64,000 bases of DNA from Paragordius varius. Lineage: Eukaryota > Animalia > Nematomorpha. The notes beneath the pieces are model-generated. The model ran no database searches, was not told the origin of the DNA, and saw only the letters and a program-made list of their open reading frames with translations. Positions 1 to 43,900 of this stretch are shown one piece after another (within the stretch, counting starts at the first letter, position 1; each line of letters opens with the position of its first letter). The position numbers were made by a program, and so were the translations under genes. The DNA lies in NCBI GenBank assembly GCA_964247055.1, contig OZ176050.1:11408001-11472000 (forward strand), in the 5' to 3' direction.

Positions 1-3000
1 AGAGCGTAAAAATATTTTATATATTTTATGAAACACAACTTGGTAAAAAAGCGATCATAGTCAAACTCTTTCGAAACTTCTACTGGAATGACATATTTAT
101 AAAATTGACTTTTTTCCTCTATGTATTTATGATAAAGAGACAAGAATAATATTTACATTAACAATTATTTAAATTTAGAGCCATATTTTATTAGTTTTTA
201 CCTAATAAAATATAACCTTTTCTATAACATAAATGAATATTTCCATTGTTTTTGACAAATAGTAGTATAACTATTTCAAATTTATCAATACCTATGGGGT
301 TATTGTTTTGAATCATTGTTGAAGCATTGGATTTATTTAGATGGTTGTGGCCATAATTTGCATCGACATGATTGGTGGGCAAATGTTCCATTTCATAATA
401 ATACCAAATTCCCAAAGGTTTGTTAAATATGCTATCAGCTAAAATAGGAAGTATAGGGCACTAATTCAAAATATGAGCCTAAAAATAAAAGGCTAATATT
501 TTTTATAAGGGTAACAATATTTTAAACCACGATAAATTATGCAACCCGCAAAAAATTTAAAAAAACTACCAAATTTTAAAATAAAAAAATACTACTCACA
601 AAATATAAGTAAAATTGATATTTCTTAAACAGATATTCCAAATACGTGTCTTCATTTGGAAATGAAATAGTAAAAATTGTTAAAAGATATAGTAACTTAA
701 TATTTATAAAGTATGTTTGTTTGAAATCTAATAAAATATTTGTAAAATCCCATATATTTTTTAAATCCCGTTTTAAACCCTTTATATTTATCCTTTGGGT
801 AAGGAATAGAGATGTTAATTTGTAAAACTCAAGTTTTTATTTCACATTTGTATTAATATAGATTAATTGTACAATTTCACAAGAATCATAAAATATGGTT
901 TTCTTTACAAAAAATATTAGTTTTTTATTTTTGTATTTTATCTTAACAATTTTAATTGATTGTAAATATACATACAATTATCAAGACTATCCTCTGTTGC
1001 AAATGAGGCACGTTTATATGCACACAAAAATTGCGATACAGAACCATTAATTTCTATTCCCAATTTATCGCTTTTGTGTTTATTGGTGGTGTAGGGAAAA
1101 TCACTAACAACATGTTTACTGCCAGTGTGGAATTTTAAGCGTTTCCCTTTTGAAAGCACAAAAAAATATGCTGTTAACGTTAAAAATGGGGTACAAATAT
1201 CGATGTGAAATTAGGTTTTTTACAGGTAAAAAATGAAAACCGATCGATGACCGCTTAAAATACAGTCCTTAACGGTAACCAATCGATTAGTACCACAGAT
1301 GTAATTAAGTGTTTTAAATAAATAAAAACGAAACGGAATTAACCAAAATATTTCGTTTTAAATGTTAAAATATAAATAAAAATGACAAATGTTAATTAAA
1401 TCTTTTTACTTTTTTTTAACCTAGATTGTAAATAAGCGTCAATATTTATTACATTACACAATAAACCCATTAACATTTTTTGAAAAATTATTTTTGAGTA
1501 TAATCAACAGTCAATGCATTAATAACCGGTTAAATCCGGTCTAGAGATCGAAACATTGCATTAATTACCTTTGATGTACGTTTCAACGAAAACTAAAAGT
1601 GTATGTACGACCAAAAAATAATTGTTGGTTGTTAGTGTGTGTGTCACGATAAACGTCAATATTTCGCAACATTTCGTAAATGAAAAAACGTGATGCGGTT
1701 TAAGTCTAACGCGGACCGTATTAAAATCACTGGGTTGGCGATTTTGAAAATCGGGTGTACCAATGCGTTGAATTACTTGCTGATTAATAAATGATGATGG
1801 GAAGGAATAAGGTTCAAGTTGATTCTAAAATAAATTTAACAAATTTATTATAATTAAAAGTTTAGTAATATACAACTATATAGAAGGGAACAATAGGGTT
1901 GAACAATAATTTAATACCTTTTCCACGAAATACCATTCATCTCTTTTGCTATTATCCTCGGATGATGGTTGTGCTATAAAAATTGAATATAAATAAACAT
2001 GATTTATATGATTTTTTTTAAAATCTATAACAAAGATTCAATTTTAATTTACCAAATAGGATTCACCATATTTTAATAAGATATGATTTCTGTTGCACTT
2101 TTTTTTATTAAATATATATGCATTTATTATTCATTTACTCTTTATTGATAAAATTAGGATTGATTTGAAGAAACTTAATATTCACCACCTATATTTTTTA
2201 TAGTTTTTTAATAAAATTATAAAAATGTAACAAAACTAAAAGTAATCCAAAACAACTTACTACTGTGCACATTATCTTCTGCGGGACAGGCACCCTCATT
2301 TTCAGCTGTCGGATTATTTATGATATCCGGCAAGCAACCTTTATTATCGTTCTGACTTTGTTCTTGATTTATAGTATCGATTGTACTTTTGCTATCAGTT
2401 TCCAATTTTTGTGTAGGACTCCGCCCTCCCAATGAAAAGTCGTCCACCATATACAATGGTTCTTCACTAATCGATGTAGCACATATCGCTGGTCCTATTC
2501 GCTCTAAACAAGCCAAAATAACACACCAATCCTGAACACTCAGTTCAAAGGTTTGAGTTGTCGAATCAATCGCTATCAAAGTGCTTTGATTCAATTTAAC
2601 AAACTCAAAAAGTCCAGCGGCACAATGTGGGCTAAGTCTTGTTTCAAAATAATTTGGTGCTGTAGAGTTATAAACATAAACATTGCTGGCAAAATCATCG
2701 ATTTCACGCAACGGTCGATTTTTAACGTTTTTAGTTGAGGTGGGAGCAGGAGTGATATGAGTATGACGACCCATATCATGATGATGATTGGAGTCTGTAA
2801 ATAAATATCCAAAATAAGGCACCGACCGACCGATAAAAATATTAGAATTTATTTTATGATAGAGCATAAAATATCGGGAATATAATTCAGTGTTTATTTT
2901 AATATAGAAACACAATTTAATAAGCAAAAAGACCGCTGTCATTTCGACAAGCCTATATGATTTGGGTTTTTACTGGGTAAGATACCCCAACTCTAATTTT

Positions 3001-6000
3001 CACAAACCCTATCTATACTAATCATATTTTCACTAAAAATATTAAGGAAAAATATAAAACATGACAGTTTTTTCCACTTTTTAAATTTGAGCTCTAAATT
3101 TAAACACTTGGACTTTTACTTTACATATTTCAGGTCTTACCCTGTAAAATATTTAAAAAAATAAAAAAACCTGGTGTGTCTTCAATCATCAAAAAAATAC
3201 GGAGAGACCCTATAACGCGTGAAATCATATGTTGTTTGCGGGCCAATCGTGTTACAAGTCTAAGTAAACCTATAACGGCCCGTTCCAAAAAGAATTCGGA
3301 ATACGGTAAAATTTTTGTGGACAACGAAGGACTTTGATTTGGTTGAGGCGAATCTAAATTTAATGCTGACTGAGATGTTGTGAGGTTTTTTCTGTTTTAT
3401 ATAACAAATAAATGGTTAATTAGACTATTGTATTTATCTCGTTTGAAAAGATTTCATCGCATTAGTATTTTATTATTTGGTATTTGTTAAATCAAATGGT
3501 TTCTTATATTTTACATAAGGGCGAATCGAAAAACAGTAAATTGCAAGAGTAAATCCAAAATAATATTAATCACTTATTGTATCCTACCACCACAAACATG
3601 GTTATCAGTAAACAACATCACTTCTAATTTCAAATTATTTTACCTTTTGTTTAATAAGGCGTTTGGCCTTTTCGCACTCATAGTAGTTCTGAATGCAGTG
3701 TCTGTGTATTTGCCAGACCTTCGATTTATACCGACAGCAGTTATACGGAAACCATTATCCAAATCAAACATTTTTCCATCCCGGTTTGCGGCGGGAAAAT
3801 GAGCATTTTCATTGTATAGCGCATGGCGATATTCGCGACATCGATTCACGATTATGTCATAAAAATAGGATCTAATAGCTGGCCAAGCGAATTCAATTCT
3901 GTCTCTATTACCGTTGAAGAACGCAACAGTGTACAGAAATAATGCAATTATTATGACACAAAAGTAAAAACTAGAGGATTAATATTTTTCATGAGGGCCA
4001 CCATTTTATACATAAATATACCTTAGTATTACCAATAAATCTTAACGTTTTGAGTTGCAAAAATTTGATAGAAATTAAAACTTGCAACATTTTTAATTTT
4101 ATTTCACACTTCTAATTATGGTATTAAATTAAGGCTTGAAAAATATGGCTGTCTGTCTAAAAATAAGTTAAAACTGAATGATTGATTGCCAGACTGACTA
4201 TTATTGTCAAAACCAAACCCTAGTTATAAGATGAAATAAAATAGTTAATACCTATTTTGTATAATAACGCGAATAAGTAATTCTAGCGTAAAAACAAGAT
4301 AATCCTCTGATAACGGTTGTTCGCCCAAATTTGGTGAAACATAATTTGACCGACTGCTAGGCATGTTAATCCCATCTAAAAACCACAAATTTATATATAT
4401 ATATATATATGATGATGATTTGAAGTGTTTTATGAAAAAATATTCTTTTAGTTTTTTGAATTTATTTTTATAATTCAATTTTTCACTGTTTTATACGATA
4501 GATTTTACAATTTTTTATGGAAATTTTTTTCCTGACAACACTTTTGTAAGAATATAAATATACTTTCATAATCCTCATTGTTTTGATTTGAATCCTCTGA
4601 TTTTGTGGTAGTTGCATCAGTACGATATAGCAAATCACTTGAGGTTATAATCATTAAACTCTATACATGTATATGGTTATAAAAAATTAAAAGAAATTTC
4701 TCTCAAATAAATAAAAATGTTATATTTGTATTAAGAATAATTAACACATTTTCAATGCTTCATTTTCATGGTAATAATCAATGTCCAACAAATAGTTGGG
4801 AAAAGGAGATTTAAACCAGGGCTTGGAATCAGAACCGCAAAAACTGGCAGAACAGTTTTAATATTTTAAAAACCGTTTTGGAACAAGTTCCAATTTTTAA
4901 ATAAGCGGTTCTGGATCCGCAAAAATGTAAACAACAGGAACCGAACCAGTTAAATTTTTTAGAATCGTTTCAGAACAGTTGTATGGTAGAGACAAAATAA
5001 TTCATTAAAAGCTTTCAGTATTGTATACCATTATATAGTACTTTAAAATACATCGAGCAATTTATTTTTTCAGATTTTTATAATGTCTGATGAGTTAGAT
5101 TGAAAAATAGATTTATAATGGAATGTTTGCTTAATAGAGAGCAGCAACAACTTAAAAATCCAATGCTTTTCTCTGCAGTGTATTTGGATCTTCGTTTTAA
5201 AGGGGAGCTTTCATACGAAGAAAAATGCACTACAAGAAATAACCGATTGGCTTTAACAGACGTATTACGTCGAATGAAGTAAGACATGGTGGGCGATACT
5301 TTTGAATTGTATTTAATGAGAAAAAAATGAACACTCAAATAATATTATAAATGATATAATATTGGAATTATGGGAACATTTAAAGTTTAAAAATCGCATA
5401 TCACATAACTTTGTTAAAATAACTATGGAAATAATGGCATCCCAAGTATTTTATAATTACTAATATTTTAGGTCAGTGTGGATAAATCATTTTTAACTTT
5501 AAAATTTATTTGTTCGAATCTTAAATCCTCATTGTTCCAAGAGAGTCTGAAAGCCATCCTTTTTTTAAAAATTTAACAAAATTATATTAGATATAATATA
5601 ATTTTTATAGAACCTTTGTAGATGTACTAATATATAAAATATATAAATACTTAATTTTACACTTATCCAATGGTTAGTTGATTATATTGTCAATAATTAA
5701 TTAAAAATAGGTGCTTACATGTGTATGTTTTTGAAATAATTATCAGGTATTTGGATATATAATCTGAACCATTTTTAGACGGTTATATCTATAGAGAACC
5801 GGTGATGGAACTAAAAAAAGGGACCACCCAAACCCGAACAGTTATGAAATTTTGAGAACTGTTTTAGAACAGATTATAGGTTCGGGTTCTAAGCCCTAAA
5901 TAACACGAGTTACAATATTAATTAATACCCAGAAAATATAATTATTTTTTCCCTTACATTCAATAATTCTTGTAGGGCTTCAAGCTTCAAAAATTTGCTA

Positions 6001-8719
6001 TCAAACACGAGGCTATTAGGTTGACATTCTTCGGCTATAAACTTCCGCGCAGTTTCAATATGTTGTCGATCTGTTTCGCTAAATTCTTTGATTCCACAAA
6101 ACAGCAAGAGTGTATAATCAATCGAACTCGATAAAATGTTATATATTTGACTGAGTGATATGTCTTGCGCTTCACGTATCGCACTTAATATTTTGTCCTT
6201 AAATAGATATATGGTGTATTTGTTGAAATAGTAGTAAGGAAACCCCGATTTATAAGAACGCAATCGACCAAAACTTTCAACGTTGTTAATGGGAACGTCA
6301 TTCCCATGTGACGACGATGTTGCTAAAGTTAGATATAAAAGTTAAATTTTTTTAACCTTAATTTTTCTAAATTTGAATTCATTTAAGAATCGTACTAATG
6401 CAACAAAGTACCCGATGTATTATTGTTGGCGTTATTGTTATGTAGAGTGGAACCACTACTCTCTAGTCTTTGTAGGAGGGCATCAATGTCGTATTCAGTG
6501 AAATCAAAGTCGGTGCAAAATGCATACGGAGTTTTCGATTTTTCCCCAGCATAGTTATTATAATGAAAACTTTTCCAAGGTTCTGTTGTATTGCCACCAA
6601 GAGAAGTCGATGTAGCATTATTTGAAGCAAAATACGAATAAAATGAGCTAAGAAATCCACCACCCCCAGAGTTTCCGGCAGAATTTGCAAAGGCCGAAGC
6701 CAAGTAAGATGAATTACCTACGGTGGAAAGGGGAAACGTTTCAACCAATTTGGCAAAACATTGCTCATAAGCCAGAGTGCCATTATTTGCAGCTGGTGCT
6801 GGTAAAATGAATGTAGTAACACCATAATTTTGTGGTGTGTGTAGATTCGTTTTCGTTTGTAAAGAAGTAGTATTAGAATTTTGACGATTAGTTTCATTTG
6901 TACGTTCTTGTTGGTTAGATCTATAAACGCACGCAAACAAATCAAATGTTTAATAATAAATTTTTTTCAAACTTATATATATATATATATATATATATAA
7001 CAAATCAGATTAAATTCACCCTTATTATACAATTCAAATTTACCCTCAAACAACTCAAATTCACCCTAAAACAAATTATATGTTTTTTAAGATTAAAAAT
7101 TATTTAAATTTTTTTAATTTTTAAAAAAAGAAATTACGTTTAAAATTAATATAATACTGAAAAAATAATAAAATAGGCCATAAGATTATATTTCTTATTA
7201 ATAATCAGATATATTAGGCCAAAAACACATAATTCATTTTTAGGGTCATTTTGAATCGTATATGGTATATATAACAAATCAAGATTAATATGCAATATTT
7301 TTTACTCAAAATTAGTAGTGGGCACATATGGCTGTTGCTGTTCAGTAGCTAATATTGGCACTGCAGTTAATGTTGTTGGTGTACTTATTACGACATACTT
7401 TGGTGTGGCATGTAAGTAAGGACCGCTATGATAATGATATCGTACCCGATAGTTATATCGTGTCCGTGGATCAGGATAGTAAAAACGTTCACGGAGAACT
7501 CGACATAATGGAATACGGCCTGATAAGCTTAAATAATCTTCAAGTTCCATAAAAGAGCCAGCTGGTAACATACCAAGTCCAAGGAGTTCGTAAAAAGCGT
7601 ACAAAAAGTATCGCCAACCCTCATCATGACTTACAAAATCGAAATGAAAATATAAGCGTAAGGTAAAACACGTAAAAACTAAATTAAAAGACAAATATTT
7701 TTACTCTATAAAGACAACCCCATATTTTAAAGATAACTTATCATTTTAAGTTACAAAATAAGGGGGAATAGAAATGTATGTAAATTGTTTGGTAACAGAC
7801 TCTATCACACTATATTTCATAATTGTAATCATATAAAAGTTAGTGTATCGACAGCAACTCCCGTAATTAGAAAAAATAAATTTCACTTTTAGAATTTTAA
7901 TTTGCATTGTTTAGTGTAATAGTGAAAGTCAAAATACTAATAACTATAAAATAAAATTTTTTTACTCATTTTTATTTAAATGTTTACTGTAAACTATCCC
8001 CATGACATTTAACTGTAGCAAATAAAGTTTGCAAAGCCCGTAAAGCCTTGTATGATGAACCCAAGCCAATAGCGCGTTCGAACGAAGGTAAGGAAGTACC
8101 CCAACCCCCAGCTAAAGGGTTAAAAGAATTAATATTAACACTACTATTATTATCGGTTCCGAAAGACGTGGTTGTGTTGTAATTGAAGAAAAGATTATTA
8201 TCCACTGTAGATATGGTAGATGATGAGATTGGGACATGATGGCTAGAATTTAAAATGGTACTTCCACCAGTTAGTTGAGAAACTGTGGCATTGAAATTTG
8301 TTGGATCCGAGTATAAGCCGGAGCTGGTACCTAAATTGACCCATGAGTAATTCAAGAAATGTTAAAAAATAGTTACTACGGTATAAAAAAACATTAAAAC
8401 TGCGAACCTCTGGATTAAAATATTTATGGCAAACTTAACAGAGAGCAAAATTTATTTATTAATTAATAGTAAACTAAGGTAAAATGTATATTAGATATTT
8501 ACTGTTATGTATAACTTTAAATCGATAATTGAGAATTAAAAAAGGGATAATTGCGTCGTGCTGAAGAGCTTTAAATGTTTTTTATGTTTTCACTGAAAGT
8601 TTTTACTGTCATGTACCTCTAAATCGATAAATTAGAATTAAAAAAGGGATAATGCGTCGTGCTGAAGAACTTAAATGTTTTTTATGTTTTCAATGAAAGT
8701 TTTAATATATTATAAACCG

Positions 8720-8765
<46 letters not shown>

Positions 8766-11700
8766 GTAATGGATACAAACTTAATTTCGGTGACAAGCCA
8801 CTAATTTTGACCAAGGCAATACATATCTTATCAATGATATCCGAGCGTTGTAATCGATCAGCAATTTCAGCACAATGTGATAAACACTGCATTATGGTAT
8901 CCACCAAAGTTGCATTATTATTTGCCATACTACTTTTCCATTTTGAATGCGGATTCTTGGCCACAGAACTATTTTCTGGCTCCTTATCATCATTAGTAGA
9001 TTGTACGACCATAGGTTCTGATGGTATTTTATCAAAAACGTAAAGATTGGATGCTAGGACCGGTCCCCACAAAAGTTTAAACATATCCGAATAATACGGT
9101 GAAACACGTGGTGCATTGTTTAATTTTGGATTATCATTGCCATAATCTAATTCATGGGTTTTTGGTTTCGACTGATGTGATTCGCCATCCAATAAAATAT
9201 AATGGTATAGGGGTGAATGCCTACGACGAAGCATAATCTATAGATGAAATATGAAGGGATATTTCGTTGGATTTTACAAAAATATACTAATTTTAGAAAG
9301 ACAGATAATATAAATTTCGTATTTTATATCAGTAATTAAAGATTGGATATAATTGTGATGTAAAACATTAAAATCATTAAATTTGACAAAATTATATTAT
9401 ATCGTCTTTTAAATTTTTCATTCGCATATAAAGTCAATCTTATACTATAATTTTCAACAATAAACTAATATTTTAAATGACAAATACCTATAATAATATC
9501 TTTATATATATTAAGACATATTTATAAATTTTTTTTTGTATAATTTCATTACCTTCCATACGTAATTATCGCGCACGAGTCCAGTTTGTTCAGCAGGCAT
9601 GACAATTTCTTCTGATTTAATTGCATTGTAAATTTCAGTGAGCATTTGCTCATCAAAATTTCCACCACCATTAACTTTTCTCAAGTTTTTGATAAAATCC
9701 TATAGCATCGAAACGTTTAATATTTAAAAAAGGTAAGTTTTGTGTGCAAAGAAACTGTATATACCATTTACACCCCCAATTCATAAAACTTAAACACTTC
9801 AAACACATCATATTTCAAGTTACCCTTGAACATAAAAGTAAATTCGATATAGTAAATTTAAATATTATATAATCTTAACAGTATTATTACTTAATCTACA
9901 AATTTATATTTATTAATTAAACTTTGTTTTTACCTCAACAGACATTGGATTCATTTGTTTCTTGACTAATTGATGGTGTTGATCCACATTCAACATAATT
10001 ATAGCATATGCCAAGGCAAATGCGGCATCTTCGTTAACAAACGGTTCCCCATTACTAACCTAGAAATGATTTTTATAAAAAAGCCAGTAAACATTTATGA
10101 ACACTTATAAAAGAAATATTACGACAACTGGTTTTATTTAATATTACAAAAACACTTTGAAATCGGTTCATTTCAACATAAGTTTTATTGATATGATTCA
10201 AATGTTCAATTTTTAAAATAGAAATAATCATATATGTTATACAATTCATCTGGTAAAAAATTTATATTAAAACCAACATAAAAACGAAAAGTCAAATTAA
10301 ATAACCATTAATATATAAGAAATGAAATATTCACACTTTATGTCTAAATATGCTTAATGATTATAAAACCAAAAAAACAACTATACTGATAGCTAAATCT
10401 TTAGTACACATATATAATACTGTATTAAACAAATATATCCTATGCAAGTTTTTTTAAAATGTCTAATAGCCAGTAATTACATACATGCCAATGATGAGCG
10501 AATTGTTCAAGCATAAGTGAGATAAGAGGTGCTTCCCCAGGCAGCCTAAAAGCTTCCAAATACATTCGCAACGCTTCGTCAATTCGTGTATTCACAAATT
10601 CAAACGAACTATTTTGGATTGCAAAATTATGGAATATGTATGAAAATTAGAAAGAAAACATAGAAAAAATATTACAATTGTAAATTTGATTAAATAATGT
10701 ATAAATCTAAATTAAAGGTAATATCAATTCTGTAAATTCACTATAAAACAAAAATATTATTGTTTTGTATTGCACTAATGTTAATAAAGATAAGTACAGG
10801 TAAAATTGACAAAACGTAAAAACTAAAAGACAGTTATCTTTTGATATCAAAAACAATATTTTTTAACCCTTGAATTTTCCTCTAAATCAAAATGATGATT
10901 ACAAGTATGAAAAATTTAATTTTTGCTTATGCATCAATGCGTACAGTGATTTGATAAAATGAGATATTACTTAGCAAATGCCTTTAAGGTTTCCAAATTT
11001 TTGCGGTTACTGAGATATTCACCCAACTGTTTTTTGTCAAGGTTAGGATTTTCACGTAAAAATTTGGCTATTTCCTGAGTTTCATCAAAGCTTTCATCGT
11101 TTATACAGGAGTTATCAGTGTTATCCCCATTTATAATATCGGAACCAAACGCTTTTTCTCGATGTAAAAGGTGTAAACGGCGAAAAAAGCTCATATCCTT
11201 CAGGTATTGAATACCTTTCGATGGTTTATCATTAAATTTTTCCGTGCCAATGAGCAAAATCTATCAACAATAATAATATATTTACCTATTTAACACCCTT
11301 GAACACTTATAATCAACATTAAACAATTCAATTTCCTATCTCCAACATATCAATAGTTTCACCCTAATTATAAATTATGTTTTCATCGGCTAAAATATTT
11401 AATTTAAGGTCAAATATTAATGTTTGTGGCTTTACCATTATTTTTCGTTTTACATAATATTTAGGCTTAAAAATATTAAATTTTTTGAAACATAATTATG
11501 TTGATATCGAATCTTAACTGTTTTAGGAGGTATTAAAATTTTTTGAAGGTAACATATAAATATATTGTCACTCCAACAATTCAACAAGTAATTGCACATA
11601 TAATTTATAATATACCATTTGCACTTCAAAAGTGTCCTTGAACATTTCAAGTTGGTCCTTGAACAATTCAAGTTGGTTCTTTGACTTTTTTGTTTTGTTT

Positions 11701-14700
11701 TTAACTTTTATCAATCAAATCGTAAATAATTCATCTATTTTATTGTTTTTAAGCTATTTTCTATTATTTAACATAAATTTTAAATCAATATCAACTTTTA
11801 ATCTTTGAGAAACCGTATACCTTTATTAATTTCTTAAAATAATTTTGGATATTTATAAGATTTTAACATGAAATGAAAAAAATAAGTTTTCTGGGTTAAT
11901 AATTAAAATTATTCATTGAAAACATTTAAAAGTCAATAATTTTGTTCAATTGAAAAAAAATTGTTTGAAACAAAAAAGTGGTTTTTAAATAAAATTTTTT
12001 ATTTTTAAATGAATAAATATATAATAAAATAAAGAAAATTAGGTTAATAAATAATAAATTAAAAAAATAAATGCAAAAATTATGGTTAAATCAAAATTTA
12101 TAAATTTAAAGGACCAACTTGAAGTGTTCAAGGACCAACTTGAAATGTCAAGGACAAACTTGAACTGTTCAAGGACCAATTTAAATTGTTCAAGGACCAA
12201 CTTGAACTGTTCAAGGACACTCTTGTAAATAGTATATAACAACCTTTTTTATATCCTTTAGGGTTGAATGTAAAGAGACATGGTTCGTCGTCAGTAAAAC
12301 TTGAGTATCCTTTTTATCAAAAGCAGCCTGATCAAACTTATCATTGATACTATTTTTCCCTTTGGTTTCCCCACTACCAACCTTTTTAGGGTATGTAGCC
12401 ATACAATAATCTGAGTTATTATCTGACATATAATTTTGTTGTTTTTGATCAAAAAAATGAGATTTTTCAATCATAACTGGACTACAGCTTGAAACATTGT
12501 CTTCAACGGCTGATGTCAGGGGAGAATTATCGGTGGATTTGGTGAGTAGTTTTGATTCTTTACCATTTATATTTTGTTCTTGTTCAGATGATAAGAAATC
12601 TCCTTCTATATTATTTACATCACTGTTTGATGATTTATTATTAAGCATATACATATTATTGGGGTGTGAACTTAACTTCTTATTTAAATTGAGTGATACA
12701 CCTAAATGATAATAAACGAAATGGAATACACTCTAAAAATTTGTTTTTAAATGCATAATCTAATCAATACTATATTGATTGACAATTTTTAAAATAGGAG
12801 GTCGTGAACAAAAATATTTGACAAAAAATTATAAATGGTCGACATAAAAATTCATAAAAAGATAAAAAAATTTAGCCCAAAAATTTTTCCATATAAAATG
12901 GCTTAATATTAAGCGTCTTATAAATATATTACTTAAAAATAGTTTTGTCCGTTTTTGCCTTTGAATAATGTTTCATATTTTACACAAAAAGCGTTTAATA
13001 GTATTAAATCATAATTTAAATCATTATCAACCACAATTATCTTAGTAGCCAAGAATATTGGGAGTAAAAAAATTATTTGTTGACCATACTTGTATTATAT
13101 TTATTAGTTAGTTGACAATGTTGATAAATATCATAAATCATCGCAATCAAGGATTCGAGTGATAACACATGCACGCTGTAAATTCCGGTAATAGGAAAAG
13201 AATTCTAAAAGAATAAATAAATTAAGACATAAATGAATGTATAATCAAAACAAATTTTTTAGGTTAAAATTAATTAAATACAAATTTTTATGGGGAAAAA
13301 AGAGGTTACTTTAGATAAGAGTTTAGTTAAATCTTCAAATATATCGGTTCCGTACAAATCACAATCGTAATTAAGGTAGAGCTCAGAGCAAAAATTTGGG
13401 AGTTTTAAGAATTGTAAAACGATATCAAGTATGCACTCTTTCTTCTGATACAAAACGCCTTCGGTGTTAATGATTTCGATCAATTTAGCAAAGAATAACT
13501 AGTAATAAAATATGTTTAAATCAAAGTATGACATAAATAAAAGACAATCATAGAAAAATTAACAAATATGCTAATTGTTTATAATTCAATAATGATTAAA
13601 AACCATATCGTGCAAAATTAGCAAACTGTATGAACTTTAATGCAATTCTTAATTATATATATATATAATCATAGTGTCCTCTTTTTATGTTTTGAAACTT
13701 ACACGTGTTCAAATAGAAACGATGTGCTTTCTAAAAAATGGGTCTCCAACTTCATAAAAGAGAATTAAATGCAAAAGCTGATTATTTCAATGGGAAATAA
13801 AGTAAAAAGCTTTATATTATTAATATATTTAGGCCTAAAAAAGTCCAAATATCCAATGAAGCCTCAATGATTCAAAACTTCAATGAGCGTGTTTAGGGTT
13901 TAAATTAAATTAAATTTCAAAAGACTCCCTAATTATTCGCATATTAAATTTATCTTAAATTCTAAAAAACATAGTAAAATCCAAAATTTAAAACATTAAC
14001 CATTAAATAAATCGTTTAAATATAAAATATTAACTAATGAATAATAATAATTCCAAACCTCCATTTGGTATTTCAAATATTGACGTGTTGATCGGAACAT
14101 AAAAAATGATAATCGTAAAGTCGATGCAATTATCGTAATCTTGTCAGATTTTAAAAGCTAAAACAAGAATTAAAAAATTGGGTTAAAATATATTTATTAA
14201 ACAATTAAAGGAAACAAGTATTAAATATTTTAATAAAATATTTTTCAAATATGTTTCCTAGGCACATAATCTAATATTTTTTATTATTGATTATGGCGTT
14301 ATTTTGTACATATTATGAGACATGAATGGACAACATCATAAATTTGCGATTGAATATAAAACTTGGAGAAGATTAGTTTACACAATTATATATTTTAAAA
14401 CTATTTTTCGTTATATTTTTTTAAAATTAACCTTAAACTTGATCAGAAATGTCAATGTCTAAGCATATATGTATATAAAAATGTAAAATAATTTTAAACC
14501 TCAATCAAATTTCGACACAATTTATCTTGAATGAGATTGAGAAAGTATGGGTTAGTAACCAGTAGTGATGATCTTGTTTCAAGCGCTATGGTTAAAAGAT
14601 TAAGGGAATATAGGATTTTTATGTCGGCATTGTTAGTTGAGTTTGACCTTTGTAAAGAAAATGATAAATATAATAGCTTAGAATATCAATCATAGAGGGT

Positions 14701-17592
14701 TAATTAATGCAATAATAATAATAATAATAATATATCCACTATTTTGTTTGTTGGAAACTCATATTTTGCAATTCCATTTCTACGGGTAAAAAATTATTGC
14801 TCGGCAACACCTTATTATCTTAACCAATTGTCGTTAAATAGAATTGCTTTGAAGTGAAAAAAAGTTTGCATACCATTTATTCAAATCCACACTCGAACAA
14901 TTCATTCACCTTTACATAGTTTTTTTTATTATTAAAAATTACCAATATTTTTTTACATTTGTTAGAAAATAAAATTATGTTTATAATCAAAATAATATTG
15001 AAAATATAATAAACAATACCATAAAGATATATTTCTTATTTATGATGATTTATATTAGACCGAAAACACATAATTATTAGAATAAATATCGATTGTTAAT
15101 TCAATTGTTCAAAGGTGAATATGAATTATTCTCGTTCAAGTGTGAATTGAAATGAAAAAAGGTTGATGGCTAAACTGATATTAAATTCTTTAACATAAAT
15201 CAATACTTTTCTATCGTTGTTGAGGGTGTCGTCAAATTAACAATAAACCGTAGGAGCTCATTTAAGCTGGAGTAACCATAAGGCTTTTGGGTTCCAACAT
15301 GCTCTGTATTATGGTCTTGGAGAGCATTTTGCATTTTCTTTTGCATGTCTATAGCTGTAACTGGTATTAAAATATATATAACTATGACAAAATATCCATA
15401 ATGCAATAATATCTAGTAAAAAAATAAAAATTATAAATTAATACCACTTCTTAGTAACACCCGATAAAAACTACCGGATTATCCGCATAATCTTTTTAAA
15501 AACTACAATATAAAACTTTATAATAAAATTTAAATTATTTAATTAAATAGAGTAGTGATTCATAATATTCGCTATATATTCAAAAAATATTTTTTTGACT
15601 GATAATAGGATCTCAAAATGGTAAATAGTAATTTAGTGAAAAGAATTGCTTATTTATTTGAAAAAATTAAAACTTAAAAATTAAAGGAATATTAAAAAAC
15701 GGAAAAGTCTACAGCAAGAACAATTAATTTTTAAGCTGTTGTTTATTTAAAAGGTTTAGGCGGGTCAATACTGACGTGATCTGATGTTCACATATTTTCA
15801 AACATATAAAATATTATTTATTAAAAAATATAAATACTTGGAGTTAAGGCAGTTGTCTTATTAATATTATTATTATTATGGTAATGATGTATATTTTCCT
15901 CTGGCAATAATTCAATGTTCTAACATTTATGTGATAGAAAACTTTATTAGATTAATTACTTTGCATTTAATTATAATTAATATAAATTATAATATGTTTA
16001 CCGAAGTTATGCATTGGCCATCTGAATTATCATTTTGCATTTTCTAATGGACAAAACACATATTAAAATATATAATAATAATACCAATAATTAAATTTTA
16101 AATAATTAATTTATCATAAAACTAAAAAAAATATATTTAAAATATTTTAATAAACATTACATGCAAAGCATCATGAGTTAAATCATTAACAGTGTCGTAT
16201 ATGTGACTTAACATCAACATAAATATTTCCGTCAATGTATTTTCTGCATAGTGTCGCAATAGCTCTAAATAAATTATAAAAAATTTATATGTATATTAAA
16301 AATATGAATATATTTTACATCATTTTCCTGCAATTGCTATTAATTAACTTTATTATACATTTCAAAAAAATTTACGCATTTAATAATAGGAAAAACTATT
16401 CAGCACTAATGTTTTTTAGCGGAAAACGCTTACAATCCTCTAATACATTCTGGATGTCCGTTTTAAATAGAAAAGTACCGTGAAAAAATTATATTCAGTA
16501 ACAAAATCTTTTGGCTTTTACGTAAAATTAGAAAAGTAACATCTTTGAGTAAATGCGAGCATTTATTTTAAAAATTATAAGCATTCTATGTAATTTTTAA
16601 TTATATGCCAATTTTGAAACTAATATTAATTCCTAAAATATAGTATTGAAAAATCAAAACAGCCAACCAACCTCTATTCCAATTATACTGCTTCATGTCG
16701 AAATTTTAAGTAACTAACTCGGTTTTATAACCCTTAATATACTTATATACTGGTCCCAATTCTAACTTCAGTTGTGGTATTAAACGAAATAAAACATTAA
16801 TACAATTATTTAACAAATTCAGAGAATTTTAAAAATTAATATTAAATGACATTCTATGGAATAAAAATTTTGTTAGCAAAATTTTCTCAGTAAATGTCAA
16901 ACAAGCCTTAGACATAAAAAAAATCACCTGCTAAACGCATTTCAAAAGCTATCCGAAAAAAACTGTGAAGTATTCCACAAACGGCTTGATCATTTAGATA
17001 TGGTCCAAGAGGCGAGAAAAACAATGTTTTCATAACCTAGTATAAATATATTAAATTATGGTCATTCAAATATTTGATAATAATTAAAAAAAAACCTGCA
17101 ATATTTTTTGGAGAACAACCTCATCGGACGACGGATCAGTTCCAATAAAACGAGCATGAATCAAAGAATGTGCTATATGCTGAACAGTTTCCAATATATT
17201 AGGACTCCATATATCTGCATTATGATATATATGTTAAATTATACCAATCATATTATATTGTATGAATTTTTGTAGAGAAGAAAGTGCCAATCTTGTAACT
17301 GGCCCTGTTGTGTCTTCGCATAAAATGGCATCCAAAAAGGGGGTTAGAAAAACATTGTGGCTAACATACGAGTCTATACTATTAAATATATTAAACTATC
17401 AAATTTTTTCAAATGGTCCTTCAACCTTGTAAACTCTTTAAGGGTTAAATTATTTGCATCATCCTTAAAAAATAAATTTTTATAATAAACTTGATGTTGA
17501 AGCATGCTCCATTTAGTATTTTTCTTTAAAGCTGCTATTATCATGGCTATTTCACCGTTTACAATGTTAAAATATATTTCACGCGTCTCCAT
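1..17592 (-). CDS. GBF1: Golgi brefeldin A-resistance ARF guanine nucleotide exchange factor (DCB-HUS-Sec7-HDS), 3' end outside the window
   Basis: Manually spliced, phase-consistent GT-AG exons (high to low): 17491-17592, 17397-17463, 17245-17373, 17096-17214, 16928-17036, 16161-16264, 16002-16043, 15838-15919, 15207-15354, 14500-14647, 14059-14157, 13310-13498, 13090-13204, 12244-12701, 10971-11260, 10485-10608, 9934-10059, 9553-9699, 8766-9237, 7988-8330, 7306-7629, 6412-6920, 5958-6322, 4564-4660, 4252-4375, 3644-3904, 3141(or 3171)-3391, 2261-2794, 1918-1973, 1569-1824, 976-1146; tentative exons at about 600-727, about 200-437 and 1-82. Diagnostic motifs: [19 protein letters not shown] (N-terminus), [54 protein letters not shown], Sec7 catalytic [30 protein letters not shown]1 loop [44 protein letters not shown]. 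Confidence 0.95.
4392..4410. repeat. (TA)n microsatellite, just upstream of a GBF1 3' splice site
   Basis: Perfect TA run; the acceptor AG is at 4377-4376 on the minus strand. Confidence 0.9.
4817..5898 (+). mobile_element. Internally deleted hAT-like DNA transposon in a GBF1 intron
   Basis: Imperfect terminal inverted repeats CAGGGCTTGGAATCAGAACC (4817) and GGTTCGGGTTCTAAGCCCTA (ending 5898); several subterminal GAACC/AACCG motifs; internal ORF 5100-5282 carries [13 protein letters not shown], resembling the hAT transposase A-x-x-LDPRFK motif. The 8-bp target duplication is degenerate (atttaaac vs aataacac). Confidence 0.7.
6974..6998. repeat. (TA)n microsatellite
   Basis: Perfect TA run in GBF1 intron 6921-7305. 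Confidence 0.9.
8518..8702. repeat. Tandem duplication, about 102-bp period, two copies
   Basis: taaatcgataa...gggataa(t)tgcgtcgtgctgaaga...atgttttca.tgaaagttt occurs at 8518 and again at 8620. Confidence 0.85.
8723..8764. repeat. (TA)21 microsatellite starting at a GBF1 5' splice site
   Basis: The minus strand reads CCATTAC|GTATATATA..., with the donor GT at 8765-8764. Confidence 0.9.
11613..12233. mobile_element. MITE/foldback-like element with tandem 21-bp subterminal repeats
   Basis: The left end has about 2.5 copies of gtccttgaaca(a/t)ttcaagttg (11631-11685); the right end has about 5 copies in the opposite orientation (12110-12222). Outer ends TACCATTTGCA and TGTAAATAGTA are imperfectly complementary and flanked by TA. 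Confidence 0.7.
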
Positions 17593-22885: not shown

Positions 22886-25800
22886 TTATTTTCGCTTTAA
22901 AGTTGTAGGACTGTCTCTTTCCTCGTGACTGGCAAAATTGATGGTGAGATCGGTATGATCGTTTGGTGATGAAAGGGGTCGTTGGTTTTGGTTGTTAAAT
23001 TCACTGTTATTTTCTAAATTTATTATGTGAGAAGACATAGTTAATGTTTTGAAATGTTATATAAGCGATAAAAAAGTATACCTGGAGAATAACTTAAGCG
23101 TTTAGTCTTTTTTATTTCGTCGCCCATTAATTCCATATATTTTGGTTCTAACCTAAAATATGTAAAATATTAGTAATAAATATAATAAAAATTGTAATGT
23201 GCATTGTAAGCTTTACTTGTTGGATAAATATGTATTCATTTCGAGATTAGTAGAAGAAAAAGTAGATATTTCGGTAAATTGAGCAGATTTACTAAACGAC
23301 AACTCACTACTGCCTTTTCCTGAATCTAGGCTCTGAAAAATCCGACTTCCACTTGATTGTGAATCATGAGAGGAATAATCTGCACAAAAAATATTAATTA
23401 TATTATTGTATATAAAATTTTCAGAATTAAAACCAGAACTGTCTTTGGTTCTGCGGCTCCATTGTATTTCTAATTAAATAATTTTAATTTAAGTCCCATT
23501 ATATAATAAATTTAATATAAAGAGCTTTAAAAATTATTGTTAGCCACTAATATTTAAATTTTTAATATATATTCTTTTAATTTAAATTAAATAACAAACA
23601 ATAATAGTAAATATAGTTAAACCAGTATTAATAAATAAAAAAAATGTTTATTTCTAAAGGCGTTTTGATAACTTTATTTGATAAAGTATAATCATGTGGC
23701 CGTTTTTAATGCCAGATATTTAAAGATATAGAATTTTTAATTGAAATAGGCGTCATGTATAAGGTTAAGTAACAATAAACACAAATTGAATAAATTCTTT
23801 ATGTCAATTAAAATTAAACTTTAATTCTTAACTTAATATTTCGTTTGTACTACTACGCACGCACTTACATTGGCTTGTCCGTGATAATTGAGATTCATTA
23901 TCATCGTCCAAACTTCGTTGTGATACGTGTTGAGTTTGTAATGTGGTTTTGCTCATGGTATAATGTGAAGTAGAACCAATATTTACGATATTAAGATGGC
24001 CAACAGTCGTCGTATGGGACATTGAATTTGTGCTCATTACAATTACTATTGGTGGACATGTAACATTGACCAAATTATTACCCATATTGAGATTAGTCAA
24101 GTCATAATTACTTTTTGTATCACATTGTAGTGAAGTAGGAAGAACGTTTTTGGAAAATGAACATGTTTTTGCATGAAAATTATGTGTAAGTGGCTGCTTT
24201 TGAACATTTAAGTGTTGAGGATTTGATGTGGAGCTGTTGAGGTAAGGGTGTGGTGGCTTATTCAGTAAATTTCGACCCTGATGACCTAACCGGTAAAAAT
24301 AAGGATATTTGGGTATGATAAAAATCCTACTACTACGTCTACGCGGTGTTGAGTGAATCACCTTTGGTGAAGTAACAGAAATGGCCAGTTTTGGATGTTG
24401 CGGAATCATATACTTGGCAAGGAGTTTTTTAACAAGAGCAAAAGTAATAGTCTCAACTTATACATAATGTATTTGAAATGATTGTAAGCTTCAATTTTAA
24501 AATCCAAGCATTACCAACATAGCAAATGACTGGTTCAATAAGTATTTATTTGTAAAACCAACATATATTTTTTAACCAATGCCTAAACATTTAATAAGCA
24601 AACATTCTTCCCCAATTAACGAAAAAACACATCGAAAACTTTCCTATACGAATAAATTTGATAAATTATACAACATCATATTTTCAGATTTACTTAATTG
24701 AATAGGTATGTTCCGAGAGTTATTGGTCATCTGTGGAGGTGGAAGTATAGTGGCTGCTTTGTATTTGGTACGTTCAGATAAAAACATTAATCGTTCCATT
24801 GATTGAGGACATTCAGTACCTTAAATATTATGTCAAAATTAATAGCACTGTTAAAATTAAAATTTATTCTCGAAAAATATAATGACATCTACTACCATTT
24901 AAAATTGACACTTAAATTTTGCAAATTTGTCCTTAATCCTTTAAATATAGGCTAAAAGATTTAATATTGACCGTCCACATTACAAATATATAATTATAAT
25001 AATAACAACATTAATCCTACTTCCAATATGATGTTTGTATGATGATTTTGAAGGTGAAATGTTTGTTGAATTAAGCTGTTTCTTTAGAACTTTAGAAAAA
25101 ACTGGTGGATACAATTGCTGTATATGTTCGGCCAAATTATTGGAATTTATTGTAGAGCTCCCACTCACAGCTGTGATTGGCCATTTAGTTTTAGCAAATT
25201 GGGTTAAAAATTGTCCGGGTTTATTAATATTATTACTTTTGAGGTAAGGGTTATCTATTGAGTGAATAGTAATGAATATACTATTAAATAGGACTTTGTA
25301 AAAGTAAATCGATTCAATGATATTTTAAACATTTACTACCGGTATAATGTTGAATGGAGTTATTTCTTTTCAACGTAGATGGGATAAGAGAATGTTTTGT
25401 TTCTATAACATACAATAAAATATCAGTACATAATTTGAAATCTTATATAGATTTTATAAAAGAAAAATTGTTATTTTCATAAAATAAATATATCCGTCTT
25501 TCACTAAAAATACCAATTAAATATTATTAATATATAATCTTCCTTATTTGGTTAAAAGCTAAAGACCATAACATGTTTATTCGAAACTTGAATAAAGTAT
25601 TAAATAAATAATAAAATTGTCTAAAGTTACAAACCTGAAGTACTGGGATTAGATTGATACATGGCAGCTTTAATTTGTTTTTCACGTTGTGCAGCTAACC
25701 TTTGTTTTCTAAGGGCATCGTTATGAGAAGGATTTAAGTTAGTTGATTTACCTAAAATTTAATTAATAATAAGTTTATTTTAATTTTTTATAATAAACCA

Positions 25801-40900: not shown

Positions 40901-43900
40901 GCTCTCAACACATTTAAATTTTTATATAATCGATATTGTTTGTATATATCAATTTAATATTTTTTAATTTATATATTTAATTCCATTTTTAATTAAAGCA
41001 TTTACTCATTGTCATCATCGGTAATGTAACGATCGAAAAATGCTGCTGTAGTATCATTTTCTCCATAGTTTCTAATATATAGTAAAGGGGAAAAATATTA
41101 ATTAAAATCAATTCAGATATTAATACACAATAAATTTATACAATTATGTTTACCAAATGGTTAAGCTAAGGATTAACAATTTTTTTTTCGCATTATAATG
41201 TTAAAAATTAACCCTATTTAACATTACAAAATTTTAGATTAACAAACGTTATTTATTCATGATAACACCTAAACAATATATGCTAAGCAGCAATCATCAA
41301 AAACTTTATGATATGCTATATACGGCCAATTTAAAAAAATAAAAACTTATACCATAAACTTAATGACATATTTTTGACAGGAAAATGGTATAATTCAAAG
41401 TTAAACTTAAAAAATATGAATTTTAAATTACGCTCGAGTTGGAGATATTTCATGCGCAGACAAAACACCATATTCCTGCCATAACTGGTAATAATCGTAC
41501 TGGCCAATGCATATAAAGCAACAATTCGCACTCAAAGTTTTCATACATGCTTCAAAGTATTGAGCCCGTAAATTTGGTCGAATGCCAAATGTATCGCCGG
41601 CATTTAACTGAATTGAAACATCTCCTCCTTTAAAACGCACGTAAGTTAAAAATAATATAAAAGTGATGTAATGTAGCAATTATATATATTCTCCGTTCTT
41701 ATGACTTATTTAAAATATAATTAATACTTTAAAAATATTTATTTGAATATACACAAAACAATTAGACAGTAAAACAACCTATCAAAATATAATTTTTAAT
41801 ATTTATATTATGTAATGATATTTAATGAATCAACTGTGTGAAATAAAATATTGACCTAAACTTGAGTGAATTAGATTGTCATAATAGTGTTAAGGTTACA
41901 CAAAAAATATATATTGAAATCAAATATAATTGGGTTAAACATATAAAATCCAACTTAAACAAAAAGTAAGCTTAATTAAAAATAAAGTAAACCCCGATAT
42001 TTTTGTTTTGTTTGTCCTGGGTCATCAAATGTAAAAGTATTATTGCTTTCATACGGAGATGATTCTAAATCATCGTTATTGTAAGCATTTGCTGTTATGA
42101 TTAATTGACCAGAATAAACTATACACCATGAGTCTAACCTTTCACCCACGTTTAAAACCGTAGTGTTGGTGGTTTCAGTACTCTGGACCTCGGCAAATAG
42201 AGCTTTGCGACAAACTTCACTCAAGAATGAAATATATGCCGTGCGAAATTCCGAATTAGTTAACAAACAATTGTAAATTTCATTTCGAACGTGGGAATAT
42301 TTATCATTATCATTAACAATTGTTTTAGGCATTCGAACTGGTGCCATTCGTTGGAGTCGTAAAAATAGATTTAGTAAGGATAAAGCTAAAGTAGTAAGAA
42401 TCTGTTCATCTTTATTTTGTTCCCGGCTATTTTCACAGAAAGTAGACTCGGTTTTATGATTAGTAAGGCAGGACAAAAGGACACCTACCATGTAATGTAG
42501 GTCTTCGGGTGTCCGTTGTAAAGGATGGCACTCCATACAATGACGAAAATTATTCTCGGTATGTTCTTCCGAATTTGTAATATTTGTGGAACAAGGGATG
42601 ATAAACTTATCATAATCCTTCTAGTGTAAAAATGTAATAATAGGAAATTATTTAAATTTGACACGCGTATAAAAGAGCAATCTATTTTTTGTTGTAAAAA
42701 TTTTTTTTGTAATCACATGTTAGCGAGCGCATATTTAAAAAGCTAGCTATATTTTTGTCTACTTATGCGATATTAAAAACACATGACACCTACGGCACTC
42801 TTTAAAATATAATGTGCTTTATAATTGTCCAAAATTAATTAATAAGGAAATATTTAATATGCACTATGTAAATATTTAATATATACCATGTTTATTGTGC
42901 TATCTTCCTCATTTCCCTCTGAATCATTGAATTTCGACGTTTTTCTAAAATATTAAAAATAATATATGCATATTTTATTTATAACTATTTATTGTTGATA
43001 ATTGTGTGCATAGACGGTGTTTAAAAATTAAAAAAAATTTAATGATACTTATGATAATTAAACCAGAAAAAATGGTGAAGACCTCCTAAAATATATGTAT
43101 TTGAGAGCATAATATTTATAGTTAATTAGTGATTAATGGGTCAAATTTCATACGCCAAAGGCACAAAATAATTTACAGTTTATAAAAAAAGTCCATTTGA
43201 TTATTGTCGAAATATGGTAAATACCAAAAATAGTAAATAAAAATTTTTGTATTTTGGTGAATATCATTTTATTTTTAAATCCTATGGAGTTTCGATTACT
43301 AATAATACTCAATTGATAACATTAGACAACAAATTTTGACTTTTTTAACTGCCATTCTTGTAAATTTAAAATTTATTTCATTAAGTACATAAATGGTATA
43401 TAATGGTCTAACACTTGGGAAATATTTTTTATTAGGGTTTTGGGGCATAATCATAAAAAATCAAATTATTAAAAATTGTTAGGTGGAATCATAATTTTTA
43501 TTTCAGATTAACTGTTAAAATGATAGTAAATATCGGAAAATCTAAAAAGAGTGGCAGAAAAATTGTTATCTGGTGTTATAAAAAAACCATTGATTCTTTC
43601 TGCTGTACAAATGGTAAATTCATGAGCCTAATTAAAAAATGAGCTAAATTATCGGTTAAAAAGAATAAAACATAGCTTATATACTTTACCTATCGACGAT
43701 TTATGCTAATTTTGGAGATATTCTTTTAAATTATTTCAATATGGTTTTTTAATGTGCAAATTGTGATTACATTTTAAAAAATGAGAATAAATAAAAAAAA
43801 TTTAATGTCGGAAATGGTTTGTCATATTTATTAATAATTTAATTTTTATAAACTAAACCTATCAATAAGTTGTCGAAATAAATTTTTTGTGATTATATTA

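What the first reader, a model, noticed from the sequence alone, without database searches (positions are those of the whole stretch)
17215..17490. Three consecutive micro-introns (27, 23 and 30 nt) at the start of GBF1
Introns 17464-17490 (gtttattataaaaatttattttttaag, 27 nt), 17374-17396 (gtttaatatatttaatagtatag, 23 nt) and 17215-17244 (gtataatttaacatatatatcataatgcag, 30 nt) separate exons of 102, 67, 129 and 119 nt. The 23-nt intron is needed to change frame and remove a TAG, and the 30-nt intron carries an in-frame stop. The 27-nt intron is in frame and stop-free (VYYKNLFFK), so it is inferred only from alignment to WSTHTPL|DEERDPL. The fourth intron is also short (59 nt).
Basis: partly seen in the sequence, partly recalled or inferred. 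Interest (0 to 1): 0.75.

Follow-up and report, generated by a model that had tools for sequence, protein, structure and literature searches.

The report
Three tiny introns in hairworm GBF1
The start of an ordinary Golgi-trafficking gene (GBF1) in a horsehair-worm-type genome is split by three almost certainly genuine introns of 27, 23 and 30 bases. They sit where insects and other invertebrates have 46-286-base introns, but no RNA data were available to show them being cut out.

Summary
Observation confirmed, interpretation supported.

- **Coordinates.** The GT..AG pieces at 17464-17490 (27 nt), 17374-17396 (23 nt), 17215-17244 (30 nt) and 17037-17095 (59 nt) are exactly as described, on the minus strand.
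- **Gene.** It is a GBF1 orthologue. Its closest known relative is GBF1 of the hairworm Gordionus (55% identity over 1,422 codons).
- **Splice model.** A spliced alignment guided by Gordionus recovers the same four introns.
- **New here.** GBF1 genes on eight invertebrate contigs from metagenomes (seven distinct; three insect-like) have introns at the same codon and phase as all three micro-introns. Those introns are 46-286 nt long. The in-frame, stop-free 27-nt piece is therefore a shrunken ancestral intron, not a 9-residue insertion. It is also more AT-rich than any of 996 in-frame coding 27-mers of this gene.
- **Context.** Only the first three of about 31 introns are tiny. I verified a 21-nt intron in a neighbouring gene and seven 22-29-nt introns in PSMD12.
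- **Limits.** No RNA evidence was available.
- **Prior work.** The scan has already reported such introns many times elsewhere in this genome. Introns under 30 nt are published only for myxozoans and dicyemids.

The parts
17491..17592 (-). GBF1 coding exon 1 (102 nt, ATG at 17592-17590), start of the DCB domain
   Evidence: Translation. It aligns to Gordionus GBF1 residues 8-33 and to 10 other metazoan GBF1 N-termini.
17464..17490 (-). Intron 1: 27 nt, phase 0, GT..AG, in frame and stop-free, 7% G+C
   Evidence: Absent from all 11 orthologues aligned. Recovered by the guided spliced alignment. Same codon and phase as introns of 61-286 nt in L058, L067, L078, L056, L034 and L073. 0 of 996 in-frame coding 27-mers of this gene are as AT-rich.
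17397..17463 (-). Coding exon 2 (67 nt)
   Evidence: Translation. It contains the conserved F-x-x-LK-x-x-L motif.
17374..17396 (-). Intron 2: 23 nt, phase 1, GT..AG, shifts the frame and ends in TAG
   Evidence: Best of 8 frame-keeping alternatives. Same position (seven residues after the LK motif, phase 1) as introns of 46-65 nt in L054, L047/L062 and L058.
17245..17373 (-). Coding exon 3 (129 nt), DCB core (…EDTTGPVT…)
   Evidence: Translation. Weak Pfam DCB match. 64% identity to Gordionus.
17215..17244 (-). Intron 3: 30 nt, phase 1, GT..AG, in-frame TAA
   Evidence: Best of 5 alternatives. Same split Asp codon (G|AY) as introns of 52-76 nt in L054, L047, L067, L078, L056 and L073.
17096..17214 (-). 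Coding exon 4 (119 nt), …[19 protein letters not shown]
   Evidence: Translation; alignments.
17037..17095 (-). Intron 4: 59 nt, phase 0
   Evidence: Same position as introns in L047, L058, L078, L056 and L034.
16265..16927 (-). Intron 5: 663 nt, phase 1, the first long intron
   Evidence: Same position as introns in L078, L056 and L073.
1555..16264 (-). Rest of the GBF1 gene: about 26 further introns of 82-1297 nt. HUS domain near 13274-13483; Sec7 domain in exons 10971-11260, 10485-10608 and following.
   Evidence: Guided spliced alignment and Pfam. Junctions in poorly conserved stretches are approximate.

Best explanation
The three segments are genuine U2-type (GT-AG) spliceosomal introns of a functional GBF1 gene, in a genome of a horsehair worm (Nematomorpha) or a close relative. 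They are old introns, inherited at positions shared with insects and other invertebrates, that have shrunk to 23-30 nt.

The pre-mRNA is read from the minus strand. Each piece is removed between its GU and AG, and the four exons join into the conserved N-terminus of the DCB domain.

The 5' splice sites (GTTTAT, GTTTAA, GTATAA) can pair with the canonical U1 5' end at little more than the GU. Recognition therefore probably works across the intron. It would use the very short GU-to-AG distance, the sharp drop in G+C (7-20% in the introns against 28-37% in the flanking exons), and a branch A a few bases before the AG.

The 27-nt intron is the one case where failure to splice would go unnoticed by frame-based surveillance. 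Retention would add nine residues in a loop after the first helix.

What is shown:
- the boundaries, frames and colinearity with orthologues
- the conserved intron positions
- the compositional contrast between introns and exons
- the presence of canonical U1 and U2 genes

What is inferred:
- the excision itself
- the branch sites
- splicing efficiency
- whether a retained isoform exists
For: - **Boundaries and frames:**
- **Guided alignment:** the Gordionus-guided spliced alignment returns exactly these introns.
- **Alternatives:** exhaustive enumeration ranks this model first at every junction.
- **Orthologue alignment:** 11 metazoan GBF1 N-termini have no insertion at the 27-nt site, and lengths match to within 1 residue across the other two junctions.
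- **Intron positions:** they are conserved. 25 of the 26 introns found in the first 180 codons of eight metagenome GBF1 contigs (L047 and L062 are two copies of one gene) fall on one of the window's five intron positions, two of them within 1-2 residues. This includes 33/phase 0, 55-56/phase 1 and 99/phase 1.
- **Composition:** the 27-nt piece has 2 G+C. 0 of 996 in-frame coding 27-mers are that AT-rich, against 7% of intron 27-mers.
- **Same class elsewhere in this genome:** a 21-nt intron lies between Pfam Melibiase_2 positions 26 and 28. Seven 22-29-nt introns in PSMD12 have abutting Pfam coordinates (2-94|96-129|130-216).
- **snRNAs:** canonical U1 (ACTTACCTG) and U2 (GTAGTA) genes are present.
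Against: - No RNA evidence of any kind was available. No transcript-derived protein of this species or a near relative was found.
- The 27-nt piece keeps the frame open, so coding sequence alone cannot exclude retention.
- The 5' splice sites are weak against the canonical U1 sequence.
- Homology-free tests did not separate GT..AG from control dinucleotides (ORF bridging; longest ORF with skips).
Confidence: 0.86

Rival explanations
1. The 27-nt piece is not an intron, or is constitutively retained. It would encode a lineage-specific nine-residue insertion (VYYKNLFFK) in the DCB domain. Only the 23- and 30-nt pieces would be introns.
For: The piece is in frame and stop-free. Retention is the second-best model at that junction. 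The site lies in a variable loop.
Against: It starts with GT and ends with AG exactly at the alignment gap (0.2% expectation). It is more AT-rich than any in-frame coding 27-mer of the gene. It is absent from Gordionus and 10 other animals. It sits exactly where six other GBF1 genes have a phase-0 intron.
Confidence: 0.07
2. Junction 2 uses a longer intron, either 65 nt (17425-17361) or 47 nt (17425-17379), instead of the 23-nt one.
For: Both alternatives keep the frame open and have GT..AG ends.
Against: They score 188 and 128 units lower over six orthologues. Their donor position matches no intron in other GBF1 genes, whereas the 23-nt intron matches L054, L047 and L058.
Confidence: 0.03
3. 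The pieces are not removed from RNA at all. The locus would be a decaying pseudogene, or the pieces would be assembly insertions or DNA segments eliminated from somatic DNA.
For: No RNA evidence was available. The genome is rich in repeats.
Against: 1,422 codons align to Gordionus GBF1 at 55% identity with no stop inside the aligned exons. About 31 GT..AG introns restore the frame throughout. The boundaries are GT..AG, not TA..TA. The positions are ancestral intron positions. The same class interrupts PSMD12 and an alpha-galactosidase gene.
Confidence: 0.03

Closest known systems
Ultrashort introns of myxobolid Myxozoa (Henneguya salminicola, median 27 bp; Thelohanellus kitauei and Myxobolus rasmusseni, median 22 bp), PMC13644364
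   Same: Animal GT-AG introns of 20-30 nt at conserved positions between conserved exons. The 5' splice-site motif is reduced (GT plus little else), and the introns are AT-rich with A residues shortly before the AG. Canonical U2 snRNA is present, and short introns cluster next to other short introns.
   Different: In myxobolids the median intron of the whole genome is tiny. Here only 3 of about 31 introns of the gene are under 31 nt, and they lie next to introns of 59-1297 nt. The lineage is also different: the closest relative here is a hairworm, not a cnidarian.
Dicyema japonicum (Dicyemida) short introns, as summarised in PMC13644364
   Same: The second published animal lineage with introns under 30 nt and reduced splice-site motifs, also in a parasite.
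   Different: A different phylum, and according to that paper a genome-wide short-intron regime rather than a mixture within one gene.
Ciliate tiny introns (Paramecium about 25 nt, 10.1101/2021.08.05.455221; PMC5014332)
   Same: The same size class, AT-rich, GT-AG.
   Different: These are protists in which nearly all introns are tiny. From my own knowledge, not tested here, stop-free 3n introns are depleted there. Here 1 of the 4 verified 3n micro-introns is stop-free, which is too few to test.
Human ultra-short introns (43-65 nt; PMC4463651, PMC8363638)
   Same: Rare very short introns that coexist with long ones in the same genome and need special handling at the 3' splice site (SPF45 instead of U2AF).
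   Different: About twice as long as those here. No factor dependence was tested here.
Gordionus sp. m RMFG-2023 GBF1-like protein XP_065314924.1 (P0002)
   Same: The closest known relative of the gene: 55% identity over 1,422 aligned codons, and the same N-terminal join (…WSMLQHQ directly followed by DD…).
   Different: Only protein models are available here. Its exon-intron structure could not be read. Its isoforms differ by in-frame blocks of 15, 15 and 10 residues.

Membership tests
U2-type GT-AG spliceosomal intron | GT at the 5' end and AG at the 3' end | tested here: met
   All three pieces and the 59-nt intron have them.
U2-type GT-AG spliceosomal intron | Removal restores an open frame colinear with orthologous proteins | tested here: met
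U2-type GT-AG spliceosomal intron | Position and phase shared with introns of orthologous genes in other taxa | tested here: met
   Positions 33/0, 55-56/1 and 99/1 are shared with eight metagenome GBF1 contigs.
U2-type GT-AG spliceosomal intron | Excision seen in RNA (junction reads, cDNA) | not testable with these tools
   There is no RNA data source. Protein searches found no transcript-derived fragment of this species.
U2-type GT-AG spliceosomal intron | Branch point and pyrimidine tract upstream of the AG | tested here: inconclusive
   Across 11 micro-introns, positions -12 to -3 are almost only A or T, with T favoured at -8 and -5. TTAAT- or CATAAT-like motifs are present, but a branch site cannot be assigned from sequence.
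U2-type GT-AG spliceosomal intron | Canonical U1 and U2 snRNA genes in the genome | tested here: met
   Rfam U1 (124 bits) and U2 (178 bits) are present. The U1 5' end is ACTTACCTG and U2 carries GTAGTA.
Ultrashort-intron regime of animals (myxobolids, Dicyema) | Intron length of 30 nt or less | tested here: met
   27, 23 and 30 nt here, 21 nt in the alpha-galactosidase gene, and 22-29 nt in PSMD12.
Ultrashort-intron regime of animals (myxobolids, Dicyema) | Reduced 5' splice-site motif (GT plus a weak third base, no AAGT) | tested here: met
   11 micro-introns show GT, then T or A, then T in 9 of 11. None has GTAAGT. The sample is small.
Ultrashort-intron regime of animals (myxobolids, Dicyema) | Tiny introns are the genome's typical intron (median under 30 nt) | tested here: not met
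   In this gene 3 of about 31 introns are tiny; the rest are 59-1297 nt. The genome-wide spectrum was not measured.
GBF1/Gea subfamily of large Sec7 ArfGEFs | Sec7 domain with HUS and DCB domains upstream | tested here: met
   Sec7 E=6e-14 and 4e-11, HUS E=2e-07. DCB is weak on a single 42-residue exon (E=0.028).
GBF1/Gea subfamily of large Sec7 ArfGEFs | Closest relatives are GBF1, not BIG or cytohesin | tested here: met
   The best full-length hits are all named GBF1 or garz. The N-terminus is colinear with 11 GBF1 proteins.

The most novel reading that the evidence does not exclude
Horsehair worms would be a third animal lineage with spliceosomal introns under 30 nt, but in a mixed regime. 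One canonical U1/U2 spliceosome would remove 21-30-nt and kilobase introns from the same transcript, with the tiny ones clustered together, often at the 5' end.

In-frame, stop-free cases such as the 27-nt GBF1 intron could then yield small protein isoforms when retained. Gene finders and read aligners that refuse such short introns could be mis-modelling genes, and so inflating the reported 'gene losses' and low BUSCO scores of Nematomorpha.
Probability: 0.7. Interest if true: 0.7.

Novelty: new member of a known kind. Interest (0 to 1): 0.55.

Why it matters
Introns under about 30 nt were long held to be absent from animals. The held literature reports them for only two parasitic lineages, myxobolid myxozoans and a dicyemid (PMC13644364). 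A hairworm-type genome in which ancestral introns of a large, essential gene have shrunk to 23-30 nt, while neighbouring introns stay long, would add a third and independent case.

It would also be a more informative case, because the same spliceosome has to handle both size classes within one transcript. That makes the minimal-intron question testable in an ecdysozoan.

There is a practical side too. By default, as far as I recall, common annotation tools disallow or penalise such introns. Hairworm gene sets and their reported gene losses may therefore need re-examination. The Gordionus assembly scores only 71.6% on BUSCO (10.1101/2023.06.26.546503). The link between that score and tiny introns is my inference and was not tested.

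This locus is only one more instance of something the scan has already flagged many times in this genome. Its specific additions are a stop-free in-frame micro-intron and direct positional homology for all three introns.

Tried and rejected
- **ORF-bridging test**. I counted short GT..AG pieces that join two open frames of at least 20-40 codons and compared them with control dinucleotide pairs, with and without a G+C filter. There was no enrichment in 64 kb. Short open frames are too common for the test to have power.
- **Homology-free search for the longest ORF with skips**. It recovers the 23-, 30- and 59-nt GBF1 introns and all seven PSMD12 introns. However, control pairs such as GA..TG or TA..AT reach similar scores, so it is not a statistical proof. 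The Pfam coordinates carry the evidence instead.
- **The look-up of encoding contigs for the Gordionus gene**.
- **Search for shorter relatives or transcript fragments** with the 674-residue Gordionus fragment: nothing found.
- **Search among the 80 metagenome loci for a hairworm-like contig**: none, with best exon identities of 50-70%.
- **Pfam on the flanks of other candidate micro-introns** at 46944-46968, 41971-41992, 43299-43320, 57249-57278 and 24929-24950: no family on both sides, so these remain unverified.
- **First fetch of PSMD12**: I refetched it.
- **Joined model.** Exons were searched one by one, by reference. The joined reading was used only inside local scripts, to print it once and to score alternative splice models against six orthologue N-termini.
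- **Human DNA.** I took no contig for human.
Full report
**Observation**

On the minus strand, the ATG at 17592 opens a 102-nt exon. It is followed by GT..AG pieces of 27 nt (17490-17464), 23 nt (17396-17374), 30 nt (17244-17215) and 59 nt (17095-17037). Exons of 67, 129 and 119 nt lie between them.

Read without splicing, the frame passes through the 27-nt piece as nine sense codons. It stops at the TAG formed by the last bases of the 23-nt piece. The 30-nt piece has an in-frame TAA.

**Gene and organism**

Single exons, searched by reference, hit Pfam Sec7 (E=6e-14 and 4e-11) and HUS (2e-07). They hit DCB only weakly.

A search of 1.84 billion representative proteins with the first Sec7 exon gave one clearly closest full-length relative, P0002. 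This is GBF1-like XP_065314924.1 of the hairworm Gordionus sp. m RMFG-2023. Its summed tblastn score on the window is 1329 bits, against at most 644 for tick, annelid, insect and other GBF1 proteins. Identity is 55% over 1,422 aligned codons.

The window has about 27% G+C, as does the Gordionus assembly (26.93%; 10.1101/2023.06.26.546503). I therefore read the genome as a nematomorph or a near relative. The assembly available to these tools is 110.6 Mb in 44 contigs, smaller than the 200-300 Mb quoted for published hairworm genomes (10.1101/2024.06.11.598342). I cannot name the species.

**Tests of the splice model**

- *Guided alignment.* I wrote a protein-to-genome spliced alignment (BLOSUM62, affine gaps, GT..AG introns of at least 18 nt, three phases). 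It finds 27 further introns of 82-1297 nt.
- *Enumeration of alternatives.* I listed every GT/GC..AG pair within 70 nt of each junction that keeps the frame open, and scored each against six orthologue N-termini. At junction 1, "no intron" is second, 112 units lower. At junction 2, the 47-nt alternative is 128 units lower and the 65-nt alternative is 188 units lower.
- *Orthologue alignment.* In an alignment with 11 metazoan GBF1 N-termini, from Trichoplax to toad, none has an insertion at the 27-nt site. Exon lengths match to within one residue. Six Gordionus models from two annotation pipelines all read …WSMLQHQ directly followed by DD….
- *Composition.* The 27-nt piece has 2 G+C. None of 996 in-frame 27-mers of this gene's aligned coding sequence is that AT-rich, against 7% of 27-mers from its long introns. 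Only 0.2% of in-frame coding windows of 18-36 nt begin with GT and end with AG.

**Intron positions in other animals**

I therefore scanned metagenome contigs with an alignment of GBF1 proteins and ran the same guided alignment on 18 of the 80 loci returned. In Gordionus numbering, the window's introns lie after residue 33 (phase 0), 56 (phase 1), 99 (phase 1), 139 (phase 0) and 175 (phase 1).

| Window intron | Position / phase | Contigs with an intron at the same place | Lengths there |
|---|---|---|---|
| 1 (27 nt) | 33 / 0 | L058, L067, L078, L056, L034, L073; within 1-2 residues in L054, L047/L062 | 61-286 nt; 56 and 64 nt |
| 2 (23 nt) | 55-56 / 1, seven residues after the LK motif | L054, L047/L062, L058 | 46-65 nt |
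| 3 (30 nt) | 99 / 1, splitting the same Asp codon G\|AY | L054, L047, L067, L078, L056, L073 | 52-76 nt |
| 4 (59 nt) | 139 / 0 | L047, L058, L078, L056, L034 | 53-283 nt |
| 5 (663 nt) | 175 / 1 | L078, L056, L073 | 52-68 nt |

The table counts eight contigs: L054, L047, L058, L067, L078, L056, L034 and L073. L062 is a second copy of the L047 gene and is not counted. Of the 26 introns found in the first 180 codons of the eight, 25 fall on one of the window's five positions.

By best match, L067 is mosquito-like, L078 cockroach-like and L073 wasp-like. The others resemble non-arthropod invertebrates. More divergent loci (L030, L013, L040, L075) have other positions, and four transcript-like contigs have no introns.

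All three micro-introns are therefore ancestral introns that became very short.

**Context in this genome**

Only introns 1-3 of the gene are tiny. The lengths run 27, 23, 30, 59, 663, 117, 82, 456 nt and so on.

In the same window, a 21-nt GT..AG piece (59108-59128, minus strand) separates Pfam Melibiase_2 positions 2-26 from 28-86. This is the first intron of an alpha-galactosidase gene whose later introns are long.

About 9.2 Mb away, PSMD12 reads as a 1,371-nt frame once seven pieces of 22, 22, 24, 25, 22, 29 and 26 nt are skipped. Pfam PSMD12-CSN4_N coordinates abut across them (2-94 | 96-129 | 130-216), followed by PCI and RPN5_C.

The eleven verified micro-introns share these features:
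- a 5' end of GT, then T or A, then T in 9 of 11, and never GTAAGT
- positions -12 to -3 that are almost only A or T
- 7-27% G+C

Four of them are multiples of three. Three of those carry an in-frame stop, and only the GBF1 27-nt intron does not.

**How it probably works**

The genome has canonical U1 genes (5' end ACTTACCTG) and U2 genes (GTAGTA branch-site box). This is ordinary U2-type splicing with very weak 5' sites. I infer recognition across the intron, helped by the short GU-AG distance and the AT/GC contrast, with a branch A a few bases before the AG. None of this is shown.

Retention of the 27-nt intron would add nine residues without a stop. This is possible but untested.

**Comparison with the literature**

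PMC13644364 (2026) states that introns under 30 bp occur in animals only in myxobolid myxozoans and Dicyema japonicum. It describes reduced "GTa" and "AG" motifs and clustering of short introns, much as seen here.

The Gordionus genome preprint and a comparative hairworm preprint never mention introns. Searches for hairworm genomes and introns found nothing on the subject. The first hairworm genome paper (Cunha et al. 2023) is not in the held library, so I could not check it.

The scan itself has already reported this intron class many times elsewhere in this genome, in ATG3, CARS1, PSMD12, SREK1IP1, MRPL2 and others.

**Limits**

- No RNA evidence was available.
- No hairworm-to-hairworm comparison of gene structure was possible.
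- The taxon is assigned from one gene and base composition.
- Junctions in poorly conserved parts of the gene are approximate.
- The metagenome contigs are unnamed, and their taxon labels are best matches only.
- Homology-free statistics failed to discriminate.
- The joined spliced model was not sent to any search, scan or fold. Exons were searched singly by reference.

**Verdict**

This is a real and well-documented instance of an intron class that is new for its phylum but already known to the scan. I rate interest as moderate.

Noticed in passing
window 59108-59128 (-): A 21-nt GT..AG intron (phase 2, in-frame stop) is the first intron of an alpha-galactosidase/Melibiase_2 gene. Pfam positions 2-26 and 28-86 abut across it, and later introns of that gene are hundreds of nt long.
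   Followed up: yes
window 60002-64000 (runs off the end): A satellite array of a 62-nt unit with at least 65 copies and 84% matches. It explains the strong positive GC skew of the last 4 kb.
   Followed up: partly
window 11634-11681 and 12102-12218, inside the 983-nt GBF1 intron 11261-12243: Two short arrays of a 21-nt unit lie in opposite orientation about 430 nt apart. The units are near reverse complements of each other, so the intron could form a foldback. Their open frames are artefacts of the repeat.
   Followed up: no
window about 11099-11182 (-), first Sec7 exon: An in-frame, stop-free 28-residue insertion relative to Gordionus and to the Pfam Sec7 profile. The guided alignment found no GT..AG pair that could remove it, so it is probably coding.
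   Followed up: partly
Gordionus GBF1 isoforms P0002, P0152-P0155: The models differ by in-frame blocks of 15, 15 and 10 residues. One block starts with V and ends with K, as a retained GT..AAG short intron would. Another block removes conserved sequence (EGWKYF…), which looks like a mis-called short intron. The DNA could not be fetched.
   Followed up: partly
Pfam found nothing on either flank, so I could not verify it.
   Followed up: partly
window 8723-8764: A (TA)21 microsatellite inside a GBF1 intron, next to a 102-nt tandem duplication at 8498-8703.
   Followed up: no
G000:C3:257000-528000 and C6:565000-634000: U2 and U1 snRNA genes occur in large clusters with many degraded copies: 46 U2 and 17 U1 matches.
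   Followed up: no
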